A DNA stretch of 64,000 nt from Saccostrea cucullata (lineage: Eukaryota): contig NW_026940638.1 of assembly GCF_032062105.1 (NCBI RefSeq), positions 1 to 64,000 on the forward strand. The letters are read 5' to 3'. The notes beneath the pieces are model-generated. The model was not told where the DNA came from. It saw only the letters and a list, made by a program, of their open reading frames with translations, and searched no databases. A program made the translations under genes and the position numbers. Positions 32,567 to 38,800 of the stretch are shown here, piece by piece. Numbering within the stretch: the stretch's first letter is position 1; each line of letters begins with the position of its first letter.

Positions 32567-35500
32567 TTAATTACAACTCTTTGAATAGATACGAGCGCTT
32601 ATGATTAAGGATCTGGTTGAAGCAAGAGACTATTTAATTCGAAAGATGAATAATATTTTTTTCTGTTTTCAAACAATTTTGGTTTCTTTGTTAGACCTTT
32701 CAAACTCTGTTGAGAAATAAAAGTCACCGAGTGTTAAAATATCTAGAATAGTTGTATCTGGATAGAACATGTGGTGGTCACAAAGCATATTTGCGACATC
32801 TTGCAGATGAAAGGATTAACGGAAGCACTACCTTTAATCAATTTTGAGTGACAAAGATGCAATGCCTAGCCTATGTGTACAATAGTTGAAATAATAATTG
32901 ATATATTTTAAGCAAAATTTTAGATTAGATATTTTTCTTTCATAAATAAACACCACTATGAATTTTATAACATATGTGTTAAAGGCAAATATCGTCTTAA
33001 TTTGTATTGAGGGAAATGTTCTGACTGGAAATGCGATGTTAAATCTTTCAATTTTTTTTAATCAGGAACAATGCTAGTTCAAAACTTGAAATACATCAAA
33101 ACTTTTATAAATAGAATGAAAACTACTGTGATTGTTTAGTGTTCTTTCCAATTTAATATTTCAAATATCTACACTGATAGGTCTGAAACAATTATGGTAC
33201 ATGTAATCAGCTTAAATTTTTATTATTTTCGTTTGAAATCCAACTAAAGAGCTAAGAATTGTTTCTTTTCTCTGATTCTGTTGTCATTGTAGTTATTAAT
33301 AGTAAATAAATAATAAATGTACTATTAATAGCTTAGGATGCTTTAAATTATTAATTTAATTTGAGAACACATTGAATACAATGAAAATTATGCAAAGGAT
33401 ATGTCTTTTTTAACGTTTAATAAAATTTTATTCATGGATATATCATATTCTTTTTTATAAACGAAAGTAGATAAATGTCTACATTTCCTATTTTTGGTGA
33501 AGGGGATTTTTGTTGCCCACCTCTATTAATAACCCAGTTCTTTGAAATGTAAATAACAATGAGCCGAAACTTAAAACTGGGAGGCGTAAATTTATGTTCA
33601 ATATGTGAACCACTGTGCTTTTTGTAATACAGGTTCCATGGGATCCGAACGTAAAAAACGTAAGTAAGCACTAGGTACCTGTAAGATATTTATAGATTTC
33701 GGTTTAGCGGTATTAAACTTTTTATATACACAATGATTCTCTTAGTTCAAAAATCTTATTAAGACGAATTCACTAATATAAACAATAGTTTACAAACCAC
33801 GATTTAAAATTTTTGTCACTGTAAATAAATATTCTATTTTAAACATTAATAGTGAAATAGATTTACAATGATTCAAGAATATTAAATACGTGCTAATATA
33901 ATTTTTAATATCATTAAATTTCACTCCATTTTAGGGTATGGAAGGAAATGTGATAAGTTAATTTAAATATTTTCCCCGAGTTGTAATTATTTATGTTGAT
34001 TGTGAGGGATATCAGAGCGATATGTGTCAAAGTTAATAAAAATATCAATATAAAGTAGCAAAGTGTCAAGGAATTTTACTTAAGATTAATAGTAAATATC
34101 TGTTTAGGGAAAGCATATCAGATTTATTTCCCTTTCAAAAGGCAAGATAAATGGGAGTTAATGTACCCAACTAAAATGAAAACAAACAAGGGATATGTTA
34201 CTGAATTCTTATCTTTCAAATATTTACTACCTTTTTGACACTGTAAACAGATTAAAATTTAAAACACAATGCTTAATAACCATTTGCCTGCATTTGTTAT
34301 CTCATTTTTATCATCATAAACTAGATTTGATACTAAAACCACTTATGACAAATCAGGAATTTTTATGCATAAAGCGACATGTCATAAGTACGACCCACTT
34401 TAAACTTCTGTGCAAGTTAAAAGTTTTTTGAACGAGTGCCAGTTATTAAGTATCGTGACCAGGAATTTAATTCTCCAGAGACAAAAACTTAAAGTTACGG
34501 AAGATTGCTGGACAATTGCGGGTTAGACATTAGAACCCTCAGCGGGTACACGAGCCCTGGGGATCCTGTTGTGTCGTTAACCAGGACAAGTTTAATCAGG
34601 ATCGTATGGTATACATGCTCTGTTGATCGGGTGATTTAAAACTTGGAATGTATTTTGTTTGAAAAAAATGTGACCTTAAATCGACGTCCTCGAAGGAAGT
34701 TTTAGTAAACATTTATGTCACGTGACTCCTAGATAAAAAGTTTATGTGGCTACCCGGAGAGTGAACAGAATAGGGTGTGTAATCACAGGAGATAGGGGAC
34801 TACACCAGAGGAGTACCACAACAGGAAAAACAACACAGGATTTCAAGATCACTGTATTTATTTAACTTCCTTGTTTTACAACGATGTTACAGTACTGTGT
34901 GAAATGGATGGATTTGTGAAAAAAAAGTCAGGAGAAATATAATTTTTGCATCAACCTGCAGATCAGATTACAATTTTAAGTCTATGATGAATCTTCAGTA
35001 GTCGACTGTGACATTTCTGCAGATCTACTTTATTGAAATTGGAGACATTTAAATTAGTTACCTCCCCCTTAGTACAGTAAGTATCTGTGCACTCAATCAA
35101 GCTGTTATCTTATCTTCAGACCACGGTCACCAGACATTTGTAATTTGGAGTCAGGCCCACGTTACGGGAGTTTGCAGACCCTTTGTACAGTGAAATGGAC
35201 CGATCATCTAATACAAGTATGTTATCACGTCTTTTTGTTGTACTAACGGATAAACTGAAGGAGTAGTCACATTTTTAAGGAAGAATTGTGAAGGAGGATG
35301 AAAGCTGTAGCTGTTTATATATGTCCAGATACACTTAAAAACGACAACAAAGGTTCTAAAATGTGTTAATTTAACAAAACGGTACAGCACACAAAAATCA
35401 ACAACAGAAAACGTGTTTACAAAAAAATCACGTTATCGGCGACCCCGATGTATTTATCATTGTACAATCCTGATAAGGGAAGGATGCACTTGACAATTTT

Positions 35501-35841
35501 GTAGTTTGGTGTGATATGGAAATATAATCTACGATTTAATAAAAAATAGTTTGCTAGCAATAGCTTAACAGAAAGGGTATACTAGATATACCTTTTTACG
35601 ATTGTGTCAGTCTATGGTTAAAACTTCAAGGTATGGTTACTAGCTTTACAGTTCAATTCCCTTATATGATACAACACTTATAAAGTATGTATATGAAAAA
35701 AATCAGATTACTCTCACCAACCAAAGTGGGGTGTCAACATTGGAGAAAAGTAAAGTCACAACCAGTACTCTCTCTAATTGCAATGCGCAAGGAATTATCA
35801 TGCAGATTTGTTCAGTAACCTTGTCTTGTTGATTTACAGGT

Positions 35842-38800
35842 ATGCTGCACAAGGTGGAATTGAATAGCCTCGATGTATCGAACTTGTTGTGGGATATGCA
35901 GAAGACATGTGTTACAAATGAGGACATAGAACTGCTGTGGGAAATCAAAAATGTCTGGTTGGTCCGGAACAAGGATCTGGAAGAAAGATACGAAAAGAAA
36001 CGCAAATTAATGAAGACTTTGGTATAAACACGTCCTTTGTTCCCTGTCTGATTCTACGTGTATTTCAGCCTATGTTATGTGACTTACGCGTATTTTTTTT
36101 CTATTGTAGGAAAGATCAGACGAGCAAGTACAGGATGACTTGCTTTTTATGGCAGAAGGATGGAACAACGTTCACAAAATTTGCAAGTATGGACCACGAT
36201 GTCAGGAGAAAAAGAACAATGTACTTGGAGACACACAATATGGGATTCACATGAACAGGCATTACGATATCTTAACACGATTCATGGCGTTCAAGAACTT
36301 TCAACAAGCAAACTACATAGTAGTTCTAAGGGTATTTTTTTTTTAAGAAAAATCTTTAGTCACTACTTAGCTGGTATCTTAATGTTTCATTTCTACTTTT
36401 CCAGTGTTCTATAAAAAAACTTCTTGCTACATTACAGGCAATGCTTGGACGCGTCAAGAAAGTGAAACCTTACTTAACAGGGGAATATGGCTGTATAGCA
36501 CCAACACCAAATTATGACTCTCATGTTTCCGAGGATGAGCCTGACCTGACAAGCATTGACATCTGCGATGCCATTGCCTACAACTTTGTGAGTAAACGAA
36601 ACTGAGTACATTTACATATCAATTATCAGGGAGAAATAGTTGTTGCAATTTCTCTGTATCTAATTGTATGGCTATGATTGTTTTTTTAGGTCTATATGTA
36701 TGAATACGACGAAGAAACCATTCTTCCTATGGCATATCCTTCACATGTACTCCCTATTGCAGTTATACAGCTGTATCGAACCAGAAACAGACTAATTCGT
36801 CCATTAACATACAAAAGGGAAAGGGATCTTGTAAATAGCAAAAATGTTCAACGTCTTGCTAATGAAACAAAGCCTTTAAAACATTTGCCAAAAGCAGCAC
36901 CATACAAAAAATATATAGTTGAAGGTAGGCGTTCAGGGACAAAACTTATCTCAGATGTACCTATCGAACCTCCATCCCAAAATCCACCATCAGAAACAAC
37001 AAAAAGACTAGAAAAATTCAGAAGAGCTTCCACTATGTCTGGAGGAACCGGTATGGCTCATCTGTTTTACAAACTACCTTTCAACAAAATGCCCCTCTCG
37101 TGGCAGCGGAAGTTTTATTTCAGAAAGAAACCAAGACATAAGCTGTATTCAAAGGGAACATATAGAAGACGTTCAAGATCAAGATCATCAAGTAAAGAAT
37201 CAGATAACAGTCGAAGATTACATTCCAAAAGTACACCACCCAGATCAATTTCACGAGAAAAGAACGTGTTTGAAATTTTCGACAAACCTCTCCCTGACAA
37301 GAAATCCCAGTCAAAAGAGAAGGAAATGACATCAGTAAACAGTGTAAGAAATGAAGGCAATAACACAGGAAATAGACCTATCAGTGGCAGTAATACACCA
37401 ACACAAGATGAACTACACTGTAACAACGAAAATGTGTTTCCAAAGATTGAGATTTGTATGGATTCTGCACCAAATGTCATAGATAAACCAGAAACCTCAC
37501 AAATATGTTTGGAACATAAAAATAGTAATCGGGGGGCGGAGGATAATAACTGGATGAGATCTAATGAGTTTTCCAGTTGCTTTACACCAGAGAGTACAAC
37601 GTCTATGAATGACTCGCAACAAAAGGACACACAAATAGGAAATTCAGCATCAACAAAATCTAAAACATCAGCTATGCAAAATGCTTCAAAAGAACCAAGA
37701 TATCAGCTTGTCAGGATAACAATTGATGAGCCAGATACTCAGAGCATTTATCATGAGTTGAGAGGAATCAAACTACCAAATTGTGATAAAAAGGCAGTGA
37801 AAGACCCAAGGCTACTGCGTGCTATGGGTTGTATCATAGAGAGTCCTGTAATGGCTGGTTTTGGACCATTCCTACGTCGAATCAAAGAGGAACCACCTGA
37901 TGATCAAAGTTATGAAAAAGGTTCAGTAAAGAAAATGAAAGATATTCTTCCCATCCAAGCCATTAAACAGGAACCGGAACCTGAACAAAATGAAGATGAC
38001 GTTGAGAAAGTGTTGAAAGAACTGGATAATGCTATTAAAGCAATTCAGAATGAAAAGGATCAAGAGAATACAAAAACAACAGAATCAACAAATAATGAGA
38101 TTTTGGAAAATGGTAAAAATGCTACTATGGATGATACAAAGTCAGAAAAACAGAACACTTGTGAGAATGATAAAGAACAAGAAAAGGACGAATTCCATCC
38201 AAGAAACATGGGATTCTCCTCCTATCTTCCAGAATACAGTGACACCAGTGACTTTGAGAGGACAGCACGGGTTTTAACTGAGGTGTTTGCTGAGAAGCCA
38301 TTGTCACCAACTAAAAAGTTACCTATGAGCATGTCTGACTACTTTGGCACTAGTAATCCAAACGTCTCTCTCAGTTCAGCAAAGACAAATATTGAACACA
38401 AACTGTCGGATATCAATTCAGATTGTGAAACTACCAGAACAGTAGAAATAATGAAGAGAAATCAGGAAAATGAGTACGACAACACCAGTAAATCAAACGT
38501 ATCTCCAGAGGACAAATCTAAAACCGAAAGTCTCAAATCCAGAACGGAACGAAAACACAACAAAAATAAAGTTTCCTCTGATTCTAGAATGTGCCATCTT
38601 AATATATCTGAAAACGACAACTCAAGTACTGATTGTAAAATCGAAACAAACACAGACAGAGAACTCAGCAGAGAGAGAAGCAGATCAAGATCTCTTCATT
38701 CTTCACAAAAACACAGAAGTCGAAGTAGATCAGAGTCACAAACTAAAACACAAAAAAGAAAATTTAAAAGAAAACGAAGCAGATCTGGTTCTCTCAGTAA

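What the first reader, a model, noticed from the sequence alone, without database searches (positions are those of the whole stretch)
35842..36790. Invertebrate TEX15/TASOR-type pseudo-PARP (DUF3715) domain hidden across four exons
Seen: the ORF track shows only a 1115-aa low-complexity ORF, but three short upstream exons splice in frame and rebuild a ~210-aa globular domain. Established: DUF3715 is the catalytically inactive PARP-like domain of TASOR (core of the HUSH retroelement-silencing complex) and of TEX15 (nuclear effector of piRNA-directed transposon silencing), both studied almost only in vertebrates. Motifs such as GIHMNRHYD, MLGRVKKVKP, PTPNYDSHVS and VYMYEY look closer to my recollection of TEX15, and no PARP H-Y-E triad is evident. 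Inference: this is a candidate molluscan nuclear transposon-silencing factor.
Basis: partly seen in the sequence, partly recalled or inferred. Interest (0 to 1): 0.8.

Follow-up and report, generated by a model that had tools for sequence, protein, structure and literature searches.

The report
Oyster pseudo-PARP (DUF3715) gene, SPOC-less
This is a real, transcribed oyster gene whose first coding exons build a catalytically dead PARP-like domain of the TASOR/TEX15 type, followed by a long disordered tail; the gene is already in NCBI's annotation and such domains are already reported in invertebrates, so it is a solid but fairly ordinary find.

Summary
The four exons splice in frame with GT..AG borders. 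Their translations are exact consecutive pieces of NCBI model LOC134255872 (Saccostrea cucullata, 1309 aa). Three raw RNA-seq runs and a 4.4-kb transcript contig show the three domain introns.

The domain is a DUF3715 pseudo-PARP:
- Pfam scores 52.8 bits against a cut-off of 28.5.
- phmmer to the TASOR structure 6TL1 gives E 5e-15.
- The PARP His and Tyr sites are Met82 and His115. The Tyr essential in TASOR (Y305) is kept as Y198.

The protein is neither TASOR-like nor TEX15 by architecture, having no SPOC-DomI and no TEX15 domain. It sits in a bivalve-only clade of SPOC-less DUF3715 proteins. The same genome also holds a TASOR-like gene with SPOC and a second SPOC-less paralogue.

Profile scores favour TEX15, but topology tests reject neither placement.

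A role in nuclear transposon silencing is inference only. Invertebrate DUF3715 proteins were already described (Schopp 2023), so this is a new member of a known kind. An earlier scan note on the tail (s1-716825) agrees.

The parts
33630..33659 (+). 3' end of a non-coding first exon (5' UTR), with donor GTAAGT at 33660. The exon's own start was not determined.
   Evidence: Thirty loose letters of a 60-nt X1 contig that joins onto 35120 match here with 1 mismatch. Single short contig only.
35120..35216 (+). Second exon. ATG at 35195 encodes MDRSSNT plus the first base of Ser8.
   Evidence: The peptide was found in frame. Borders are AG at 35118-9 and GT at 35217-8. Junction 35216|35840 is seen in one 55-nt X1 contig only.
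35840..36021 (+). Coding exon, P0001 residues 8-68. It carries the first strand, helix and strand of the pseudo-PARP fold.
   Evidence: Exact match to P0001 residues 9-68. The junction to 36110 is in 3 raw RNA runs and a contig. Model strands E10-13 and E41-49 lie here.
36110..36331 (+). Coding exon, residues 69-142. It holds the degenerate His site (Met82) and Tyr site (His115, in GIHMN).
   Evidence: Alone it hits Pfam DUF3715 positions 9-68 at 20.6 bits. Exact match to P0001. Site mapping comes from the 6TL1 alignment and TASOR L184/Y217.
36438..36587 (+). Coding exon, residues 143-192 (MLGRVKKVKP, PTPNYDSHVS).
   Evidence: Pfam DUF3715 positions 80-108 at 12.4 bits. Exact match to P0001. 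Junctions on both sides are seen in reads.
36690..40043 (+). Last coding exon, residues 193-1309 plus stop TAA. The first 30 codons finish the domain (YMYEY, with Y198 equivalent to TASOR Y305); the rest is the tail.
   Evidence: ORF. Exact match to P0001 residues 193-1309. Covered by reads throughout, with depth falling off after about 40200.
35842..36779 (+). Genomic span of the pseudo-PARP (DUF3715/RDTS) domain, residues 9-222, interrupted by three introns.
37347..38960 (+). Tail segment (residues 412-949) that aligns only with oysters and the pearl oyster Pinctada. It contains the psi-K-x-E motifs IKEE (37881-37892) and IKQE (37962-37973).
   Evidence: Local jackhmmer; motif scan.
38664..38987 (+). 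Arg/Ser-rich stretch (residues 851-958) with RSRSRS runs and basic runs KRKR and KKKK.
   Evidence: Composition script.
39342..39551 (+). Conserved block of about 65 aa (residues 1077-1146, TLSKAMTSLLKKIVFRDN...AEGRMADMVIELVKDQMSKE). It is shared with Pinctada, Pecten and Mytilus orthologues. No known family.
   Evidence: Local jackhmmer, 79-85 bits to P0008, P0010 and P0012. No Pfam hit. No Atlas hit.
39801..39998 (+). Arg-Gly-rich C-terminal tail (about residues 1230-1295), kept in the oyster orthologues.
   Evidence: 9-10 RG/GR dipeptides in the last 130 residues of the Saccostrea and C. virginica proteins, 7 in the Logan oyster P0004.

Best explanation
Shown: a six-exon, transcribed host gene (NCBI LOC134255872, Saccostrea cucullata) encodes a 1309-aa protein. 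Residues 9-222 fold as a TASOR/TEX15-type pseudo-PARP (DUF3715, also called the RDTS domain). The NAD-binding His and Tyr are replaced by Met82 and His115, so it should not ADP-ribosylate. The loop tyrosine that TASOR needs for silencing is kept as Y198. The remaining 1,070 or so residues are Ser/Lys/Arg-rich and low in hydrophobic residues, with RS runs, basic runs, two psi-K-x-E motifs and an RG-rich end. There is no SPOC-DomI and no TEX15 domain. The gene belongs to a bivalve-only clade of SPOC-less DUF3715 proteins and is one of three DUF3715 genes in this genome.

Inferred: it acts in the nucleus as a non-enzymatic adaptor on nascent RNA or chromatin. The pseudo-PARP would provide the silencing function seen in TASOR and TEX15, a function whose molecular basis is still unknown. 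The disordered tail would supply localisation and partners.
For: Gene and splicing.

Domain identity:
- Pfam PF12509 scores 52.8 bits against a cut-off of 28.5.
- phmmer to 6TL1 gives E 5.2e-15.
- AF2 model has pLDDT 91.8.
- Foldseek to 6TL1 gives E 9e-18 against about 1e-9 for PARPs.

Dead site:
- Met82 and His115 sit at TASOR L184 and Y217, the PARP His and Tyr sites.
- Y196-E197-Y198 align with TASOR Y303-E304-Y305.

Constraint: the domain is 80-93% identical among oysters, against 49-51% over the first 500 residues of the last exon between genera (81% within Saccostrea).

Architecture:
- A SPOC-DomI profile finds 53 of 59 rows on the TASOR side and 0 of 84 on the other side. P0001 scores at best 0.8 bits.
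- A TEX15-domain profile finds 27 proteins, all in the vertebrate TEX15 clade of the tree (25 of them among its rows).

Paralogues: locus C7933 has DUF3715 plus SPOC exons, and locus C18773 is a second SPOC-less gene.

Functional precedent: the DUF3715 of TASOR and TEX15 are interchangeable for LINE-1 silencing, and the TASOR domain binds ssRNA weakly (PMC10578480; 10.1101/2020.03.09.974832).

Tail composition.
Against: - No functional, localisation or tissue data exist for this gene or any bivalve orthologue. The sample identities of the RNA runs are coded.
- The Glu position of the PARP triad was not mapped structurally, and E197 lies in a YEY motif.
- Disorder of the tail is judged from composition only.
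- RS, RG and psi-K-x-E motifs are short and common, so they support a nuclear role only weakly.
- The molecular action of DUF3715 is unknown even in mammals.
- Silencing by TASOR also needs SPOC-DomI and the PIN/DomII partners, which this protein lacks.
Confidence: 0.6

Rival explanations
1. It is the bivalve orthologue of TEX15. On this view it is a germline nuclear effector acting downstream of PIWI-piRNA complexes, and its TEX15 domains were either never gained or have diverged beyond recognition.
For: - After the molluscs, the best hits of the oyster domain profile are vertebrate TEX15 (P0021, 99.6 bits). Vertebrate TASOR-clade rows score 64 bits or less.
- There is no SPOC domain.
- The Mactra orthologue is labelled 'Testis expressed sequence 15' by its depositor.
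- Cnidarian DUF3715-only genes were called truncated Tex15 homologues (bioRxiv 10.64898/2026.09.07.749791).
- The AU test does not reject a clade with TEX15 (p 0.091).
- The RG-rich tail could bind Tudor proteins (inference).
Against: - No TEX15 domain is found by Pfam or by a local profile.
- In the careful tree, vertebrate TEX15 groups with one amphioxus clade (87/81). The bivalve clade groups instead with echinoderm, hemichordate and a second amphioxus clade (95/84).
- The AU test equally fails to reject a grouping with the SPOC clan (p 0.178).
- The tree is unrooted.
- A higher profile score may only reflect slower evolution.
Confidence: 0.2
2. It is a pseudo-PARP protein whose job is unrelated to transposon silencing. 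Examples would be an RS-domain RNA-processing factor or an antiviral RNA sensor or adaptor in the manner of ZAP/PARP13.
For: - The tail has 55 RS/SR dipeptides and RG repeats, as in splicing and RNA-binding proteins.
- The clade-wide Tyr-to-His change at the old nicotinamide site (12 of 12 bivalve rows) suggests a shifted function.
- This is a lineage-restricted paralogue beside a canonical TASOR-like gene.
Against: - The Z gap to 6TL1 is 7.5 units.
- The functionally critical YxYEY loop motif of TASOR is conserved.
- Every DUF3715 protein studied so far acts in transposon or transgene silencing (PMC10578480).
Confidence: 0.17
3. It is the oyster TASOR, the core of a HUSH-like complex.
For: - The best solved-structure match is TASOR.
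- UniProt names the orthologues 'TASOR pseudo-PARP domain-containing protein'.
- The AU test does not reject a sister position to the SPOC clan.
Against: - There is no SPOC-DomI, the feature that defines TASOR-like proteins (PMC10578480).
- The same genome has a separate gene with DUF3715 and SPOC exons, matching Mizuhopecten P0065 residues 85-483.
- The SPOC clan excludes this gene with support 100/98.
Confidence: 0.02
4. It is an active mono-ADP-ribosyltransferase.
For: - It has a PARP fold and a weak Pfam PARP hit (13.4 bits).
- A Glu (E197) sits in a YEY motif reminiscent of the PARP NEY motif.
Against: - The His site is Met82 and the following Gly is Ala83. The Tyr site is His115.
- The closest structure is the experimentally inactive TASOR domain, which has the same YEY motif (10.1101/2020.03.09.974832).
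- The score is below the Pfam PARP cut-off of 26.7.
Confidence: 0.01

Closest known systems
TASOR (FAM208A) pseudo-PARP domain, PDB 6TL1; core of the vertebrate HUSH complex
   Same: - Same domain family (Pfam PF12509).
- About 21-22% identity in the structural alignments.
- The NAD site is degenerate.
- The YxYEY motif, including the essential Y305 position, is conserved.
   Different: - No SPOC, DomI, DomII or PIN domains follow the pseudo-PARP.
- The Tyr that TASOR still keeps (Y217) is His here.
- The beta8-beta9 loop is 2 residues longer.
- A separate TASOR-like gene exists in the same genome.
TEX15, vertebrate nuclear piRNA-pathway effector
   Same: - N-terminal DUF3715 with no SPOC after it.
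- The rest is long and largely low-complexity.
- Vertebrate TEX15 are the best non-mollusc hits of the oyster domain profile.
   Different: - No TEX15 domain (PF15326), which is found once or twice in vertebrate TEX15.
- Less than half the length.
- The tree places it in another clan, though orthology is neither shown nor rejected.
SPOC-less invertebrate DUF3715 proteins (unnamed clades in Schopp et al. 2023, PMC10578480; 'truncated Tex15 homologs' of cnidarians, bioRxiv 10.64898/2026.09.07.749791)
   Same: The architecture is a pseudo-PARP alone plus a non-conserved tail. This gene is a member of such a clade, with orthologues in Pinctada, Pecten, Mytilus, Tegillarca, Sinanodonta, Mactra and Mercenaria.
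   Different: - The clade found here holds bivalves only.
- It carries a clade-wide Tyr-to-His change.
- Within Pteriomorphia it has a conserved 65-aa C-terminal block. In oysters it also has an RS-rich stretch and an RG-rich tail.
- None of these proteins has been studied functionally.
ZAP / PARP13 C-terminal inactive PARP domain
   Different: - There is no significant sequence match.
- ZAP has CCCH zinc fingers and WWE domains, which are absent here.

Membership tests
DUF3715 / RDTS pseudo-PARP domain (Pfam PF12509) | Scores above Pfam's gathering cut-off over most of the profile. | tested here: met
   P0001 scores 52.8 bits against 28.5, with residues 68-214 matching profile positions 5-150 of 150. 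Exon by exon, exon 2 scores 20.6 bits on positions 9-68 and exon 3 scores 12.4 bits on positions 80-108, in colinear order.
DUF3715 / RDTS pseudo-PARP domain (Pfam PF12509) | PARP-like fold closest to the TASOR pseudo-PARP structure. | tested here: met
DUF3715 / RDTS pseudo-PARP domain (Pfam PF12509) | Degenerate H-Y-E catalytic triad and NAD site. | tested here: met
   The His site is Met82 and the Tyr site is His115, mapped through the alignment to 6TL1 and the published TASOR L184 and Y217. The Glu site was not mapped structurally. The candidates F192 and V193 are hydrophobic. E197 matches TASOR E304, and TASOR is inactive.
DUF3715 / RDTS pseudo-PARP domain (Pfam PF12509) | Conserved tyrosine of the beta8-beta9 loop (TASOR Y305), required for silencing. 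| tested here: met
   Y198 aligns with Y305. This column is Tyr or Phe in 100 of 103 aligned rows.
TASOR-like proteins (as defined in Schopp et al. 2023) | DUF3715 directly followed by SPOC and DomI. | tested here: not met
   A profile grown from Polypterus TASOR finds SPOC-DomI in 53 of 59 TASOR-side rows. It finds none in the 84 others, and P0001 scores at best 0.8 bits. Pfam finds nothing after residue 214. Residues 236-420 are Lys/Arg/Ser-rich.
TEX15 | One or two TEX15 domains (PF15326) C-terminal to DUF3715. | tested here: not met
   Pfam finds none in P0001 or in six bivalve orthologues, whereas gecko TEX15 scores 240 bits. A local TEX15-domain profile with filters off finds nothing in any invertebrate row.
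TEX15 | Orthology of the DUF3715 domain to vertebrate TEX15 (forming a clade with it). | tested here: inconclusive
   The careful tree places it in another clan. The AU test gives p 0.091 for a TEX15 grouping and p 0.178 for a grouping with the SPOC clan. The tree is unrooted.
TEX15 | Germline-restricted expression and PIWI association. | not testable with these tools
   The RNA runs are coded and carry no tissue labels.
Active PARP / ARTD enzymes (Pfam PF00644) | Pfam PARP above cut-off, with His and Tyr of the NAD site present. | tested here: not met
   The PARP profile scores 13.4 bits against 26.7. The sites are Met82 and His115.

The most novel reading that the evidence does not exclude
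The bivalve SPOC-less clade is the invertebrate working counterpart of TEX15. On this reading it is a minimal nuclear effector: a pseudo-PARP plus a disordered tail with RS, RG and SUMO-site motifs. It would couple PIWI-piRNA recognition of nascent transposon RNA to chromatin or DNA-methylation silencing in molluscs. That would push piRNA-directed nuclear silencing through a DUF3715 protein back to the bilaterian ancestor.
Probability: 0.12. Interest if true: 0.7.

Novelty: new member of a known kind. Interest (0 to 1): 0.3.

Why it matters
DUF3715 is essential for both HUSH-dependent and piRNA-dependent transposon silencing in mammals, yet what the domain does at the molecular level is unknown. 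An invertebrate protein made of little more than this domain and a disordered tail, sitting beside a canonical TASOR-like gene in the same genome, offers a natural minimal version. It could be tested by domain swap into TASOR, by partner search and by knock-down. It also bears on when the TASOR and TEX15 lineages split. As it stands, the find adds one annotated but uncharacterised gene and a clade description to a picture already sketched in the literature.

Tried and rejected
- **Exon-only Pfam scans.** Exon 35842-36021 alone and the first 50 or 200 residues of the last exon gave no hit. These pieces are too short on their own.
- **AlphaFold on the six-oyster alignment.** It failed (pLDDT 33) and was replaced by a 103-row alignment.
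- **Word-index search with residues 1-230.** It returned only oysters because of its length window, so this says nothing about distant relatives.
- **Search for a diverged TEX15 domain or a SPOC domain.** None was found in the tail or in any bivalve orthologue.
- **Homology of the tail beyond Pteriomorphia.** None was detected, and blocks 236-420 and 1160-1309 matched only oysters.
- **ESM Atlas search with the conserved 1075-1175 block.** No usable hit.
- **Literature search for a DPRL or DPRLL motif.** Nothing relevant.
- **Search for TASOR or HUSH work in oysters.** None of the 15 papers listed mentions TASOR or the HUSH complex.
- **AU tests of TEX15-side and TASOR-side placement.** Neither was rejected. 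The quick tree's 99% split therefore cannot be read as TEX15 affinity, because three clans meet at an unrooted centre.
- **A joint 35545 to 35839.** It appeared in 2 reads of X22 but has no GT donor, and was set aside as noise or strain difference.
- **The neighbouring ORF 48304-50175 as a paralogue of the tail.** Rejected (BLASTP E 0.76).
- **Earlier scan notes.** A search near this place found nothing.
- **Joined exon model.** Searches on the window were done exon by exon, and the joined product was used only as the database protein P0001.
Full report
**What is in the sequence**

On the + strand, the exons 35842-36021, 36110-36331, 36438-36587 and 36690-40043 join in phase 0 at GT..AG borders. 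A word-index search with the large last exon returned a database protein, P0001. This is NCBI 'uncharacterized protein LOC134255872 isoform X1' from Saccostrea cucullata, 1309 aa.

Translating each exon by reference shows that they are exact, consecutive pieces of P0001:

| Exon | P0001 residues |
|---|---|
| 35842-36021 | 9-68 |
| 36110-36331 | 69-142 |
| 36438-36587 | 143-192 |
| 36690-40040 | 193-1309 |

All window searches were done exon by exon, and the joined product was used only as this database protein.

The peptide MDRSSNT lies at 35195-35215. A split Ser codon (A|GT) bridges the intron 35217-35839.

**Transcript evidence**

I laid three oligo-dT raw-read RNA runs and one contig run on 34700-40600. 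The three introns inside the domain are each bridged:

| Junction | Reads in X22 / X23 / X24 |
|---|---|
| 36021\|36110 | 7 / 1 / 11 |
| 36331\|36438 | 7 / 2 / 4 |
| 36587\|36690 | 8 / 6 / 11 |

A single 4367-nt contig in X1 carries all three junctions and the whole last exon.

The two upstream junctions rest on less. Junction 35216|35840 is in one 55-nt contig. A junction from 33659 (donor GTAAGT) to 35120 is in one 60-nt contig.

Most reads are 95-99% identical to the window, with fixed differences. The RNA therefore comes from a diverged population carrying the same species label. The libraries look unstranded, so the strand is given by the GT..AG orientation. Tissue is unknown because the samples are coded.

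**What the domain is**

- Exon 2 alone matches Pfam DUF3715 positions 9-68 (20.6 bits, E 4.9e-4). Exon 3 matches positions 80-108 (12.4 bits), in colinear order.
- The whole protein scores 52.8 bits against a cut-off of 28.5, over profile positions 5-150 of 150.
- phmmer against all PDB chains finds one entry, the TASOR pseudo-PARP 6TL1, at E 5.2e-15.
- A first AlphaFold run on six oyster sequences failed (pLDDT 33).
- With a 103-row alignment of domains from a full profile search, the model reached pLDDT 91.8 and pTM 0.90. It is ordered from residue 9 to 222.
- Foldseek ranks 6TL1 first at E 9e-18, with true PARPs near 1e-9.

**Catalytic residues**

Douse et al. give TASOR L184 as the PARP His position. 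They give Y217 as the only conserved NAD-site residue, and Y305 in the beta8-beta9 loop as essential for silencing (10.1101/2020.03.09.974832).

Through the 6TL1 alignment, these positions map to Met82, His115 and Y198 in the oyster protein. In the 103-row alignment, the Tyr site is His in all 12 rows of the bivalve clade and Tyr in most others. The YxYEY motif is conserved family-wide.

The Glu position could not be mapped structurally with the tools to hand. With His and Tyr both gone, an active enzyme is very unlikely.

**Which kind of DUF3715 protein**

The profile search found 268 proteins at E <= 0.001. The nearest are bivalves: Pinctada, Tegillarca, Pecten, Sinanodonta, Mytilus, Mactra and Mercenaria. 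The first non-mollusc hit is a gecko TEX15 at 99.6 bits. Vertebrate TASOR-clade rows score 64 bits or less, and several invertebrate SPOC-bearing rows score higher, up to 87 bits.

Local profiles gave a clean split by architecture:

- A SPOC-DomI profile grown from Polypterus TASOR hits 53 of 59 rows on one side of the tree and 0 of 84 on the other.
- A TEX15-domain profile hits 27 proteins, all in the vertebrate TEX15 clade. Twenty-five of them are rows of the tree, all on the second side.

The oyster protein and all its bivalve orthologues have neither domain.

A careful ML tree of 75 domains gave these clans:

| Clan | Support |
|---|---|
| SPOC-bearing (TASOR-like) | 100/98 |
| Vertebrate TEX15 | 100/99 |
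| TEX15 with one amphioxus group | 87/81 |
| Mollusc clade M1 (gastropods and bivalves) | 100/98 |
| Bivalve-only clade M2, holding this gene | 100/99 |
| M2 with echinoderm, hemichordate and a second amphioxus group | 95/84 |

The three large clans meet at an unrooted centre. AU tests reject neither M2 with the SPOC clan (p 0.178) nor M2 with TEX15 (p 0.091).

**Paralogues in the same genome**

A six-frame search of the window's own assembly found two more DUF3715 loci. By tblastn:

- C7933 carries exons matching the DUF3715 and SPOC regions of the TASOR-like Mizuhopecten protein (residues 85-483).
- C18773 matches the M1 clade.

This oyster therefore has one TASOR-like gene and two SPOC-less genes. 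That argues against the window's gene being the HUSH core.

**The tail**

Residues 236-1309 are 14.5% Ser, 10.5% Lys and 9.2% Arg. They hold 55 RS/SR dipeptides. RS runs lie at 351-360, 855-873 and 929-958, and basic runs at 885-888 and 910-913. The tail also has the motifs IKEE (590) and IKQE (617) and an RG-rich end.

Conservation falls off quickly with distance:

- Only oysters and Pinctada align over 412-949.
- A 65-aa block (1077-1146) is also kept in Pecten and Mytilus, and matches no known family.
- Among oysters the domain is 80-93% identical. The first 500 residues of the last exon are 49-51% identical between genera and 81% within Saccostrea.

An earlier scan note on the tail (s1-716825) reads it the same way. 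I confirmed the absence of SPOC and TEX15 domains and the RS and RG content, but did not test SUMOylation.

**How it most likely works**

Shown: an expressed gene for a dead PARP fold of the TASOR/TEX15 family, under strong constraint, fused to a fast-evolving tail of disordered composition.

Inferred from the family: in mammals the domain is needed for silencing by TASOR independently of complex assembly. It binds ssRNA weakly, and it is interchangeable between TASOR and TEX15 (PMC10578480; 10.1101/2020.03.09.974832). The most likely role is a nuclear, non-enzymatic adaptor in RNA-directed repression of transposons. The tail would provide nuclear import and partners. Nothing here tests that role.

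**Novelty**

Schopp et al. 2023 already report DUF3715 across metazoa, TASOR-like proteins in invertebrates and vertebrate-specific TEX15 domains. A 2026 preprint describes DUF3715-only 'truncated Tex15' genes in cnidarians. NCBI and UniProt already carry this gene and its orthologues.

What is added here:

- the checked gene structure;
- a confident fold;
- the bivalve clade with its Tyr-to-His change and conserved C-terminal block;
- the three-paralogue set in one oyster.

This makes it a new member of a known kind, of modest interest.

Noticed in passing
window 4512-5318, 11323-12093, 24473-25330 (all - strand): Three GC-rich ORFs of 256-285 aa are built on 21-nt tandem units. The one translated (4512-5318) encodes Gly-rich repeats (GGLGG, GGIGG), and the other two carry similar 21-nt units. 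Together they form a small cluster of glycine-rich, probably structural proteins. There is no Pfam hit.
   Followed up: partly
window 16210-16839 (-): A 209-aa ORF has a DDE_3 / Transposase_1 match (39 bits). It is a Tc1/mariner-type transposase remnant.
   Followed up: partly
window 48304-50175 (-): A 623-aa low-complexity ORF has no Pfam family and is convergent with the pseudo-PARP gene. It shares only a short DPRLLR motif with that gene's tail (BLASTP E 0.76), so it is not a paralogue. The motif's meaning is unknown.
   Followed up: partly
window 40732-41441: A tandem repeat of 141/288-bp units (65-76% matches) begins a few hundred bases after the gene's 3' end. Another array of 134-bp units lies at 9222-9622.
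   Followed up: no
G000:C7933:about 72000-83500 (-), loci L004/L006: This is a TASOR-like gene in the same genome. Its exons match the DUF3715 and SPOC regions of Mizuhopecten P0065 (residues 85-483).
   Followed up: partly
G000:C18773:about 450000-452600 (+), loci L005/L007: This is a second SPOC-less DUF3715 gene. It belongs to the mollusc-wide clade with Argopecten, Sinanodonta, Dreissena, Lottia and Babylonia proteins.
   Followed up: partly
window 34700-40600: RNA reads labelled with the same species are mostly 95-99% identical, with many differences present in every read. The transcriptomes therefore come from a diverged population or cryptic lineage, not the assembled individual.
   Followed up: no
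window 13580-13709 and 13829-13989: Two runs of N (130 and 161 bases).
   Followed up: no
window 37115-37630 (-): A 171-aa antisense ORF lies inside the last exon. It is most likely a by-product of the biased composition of the sense strand.
   Followed up: no
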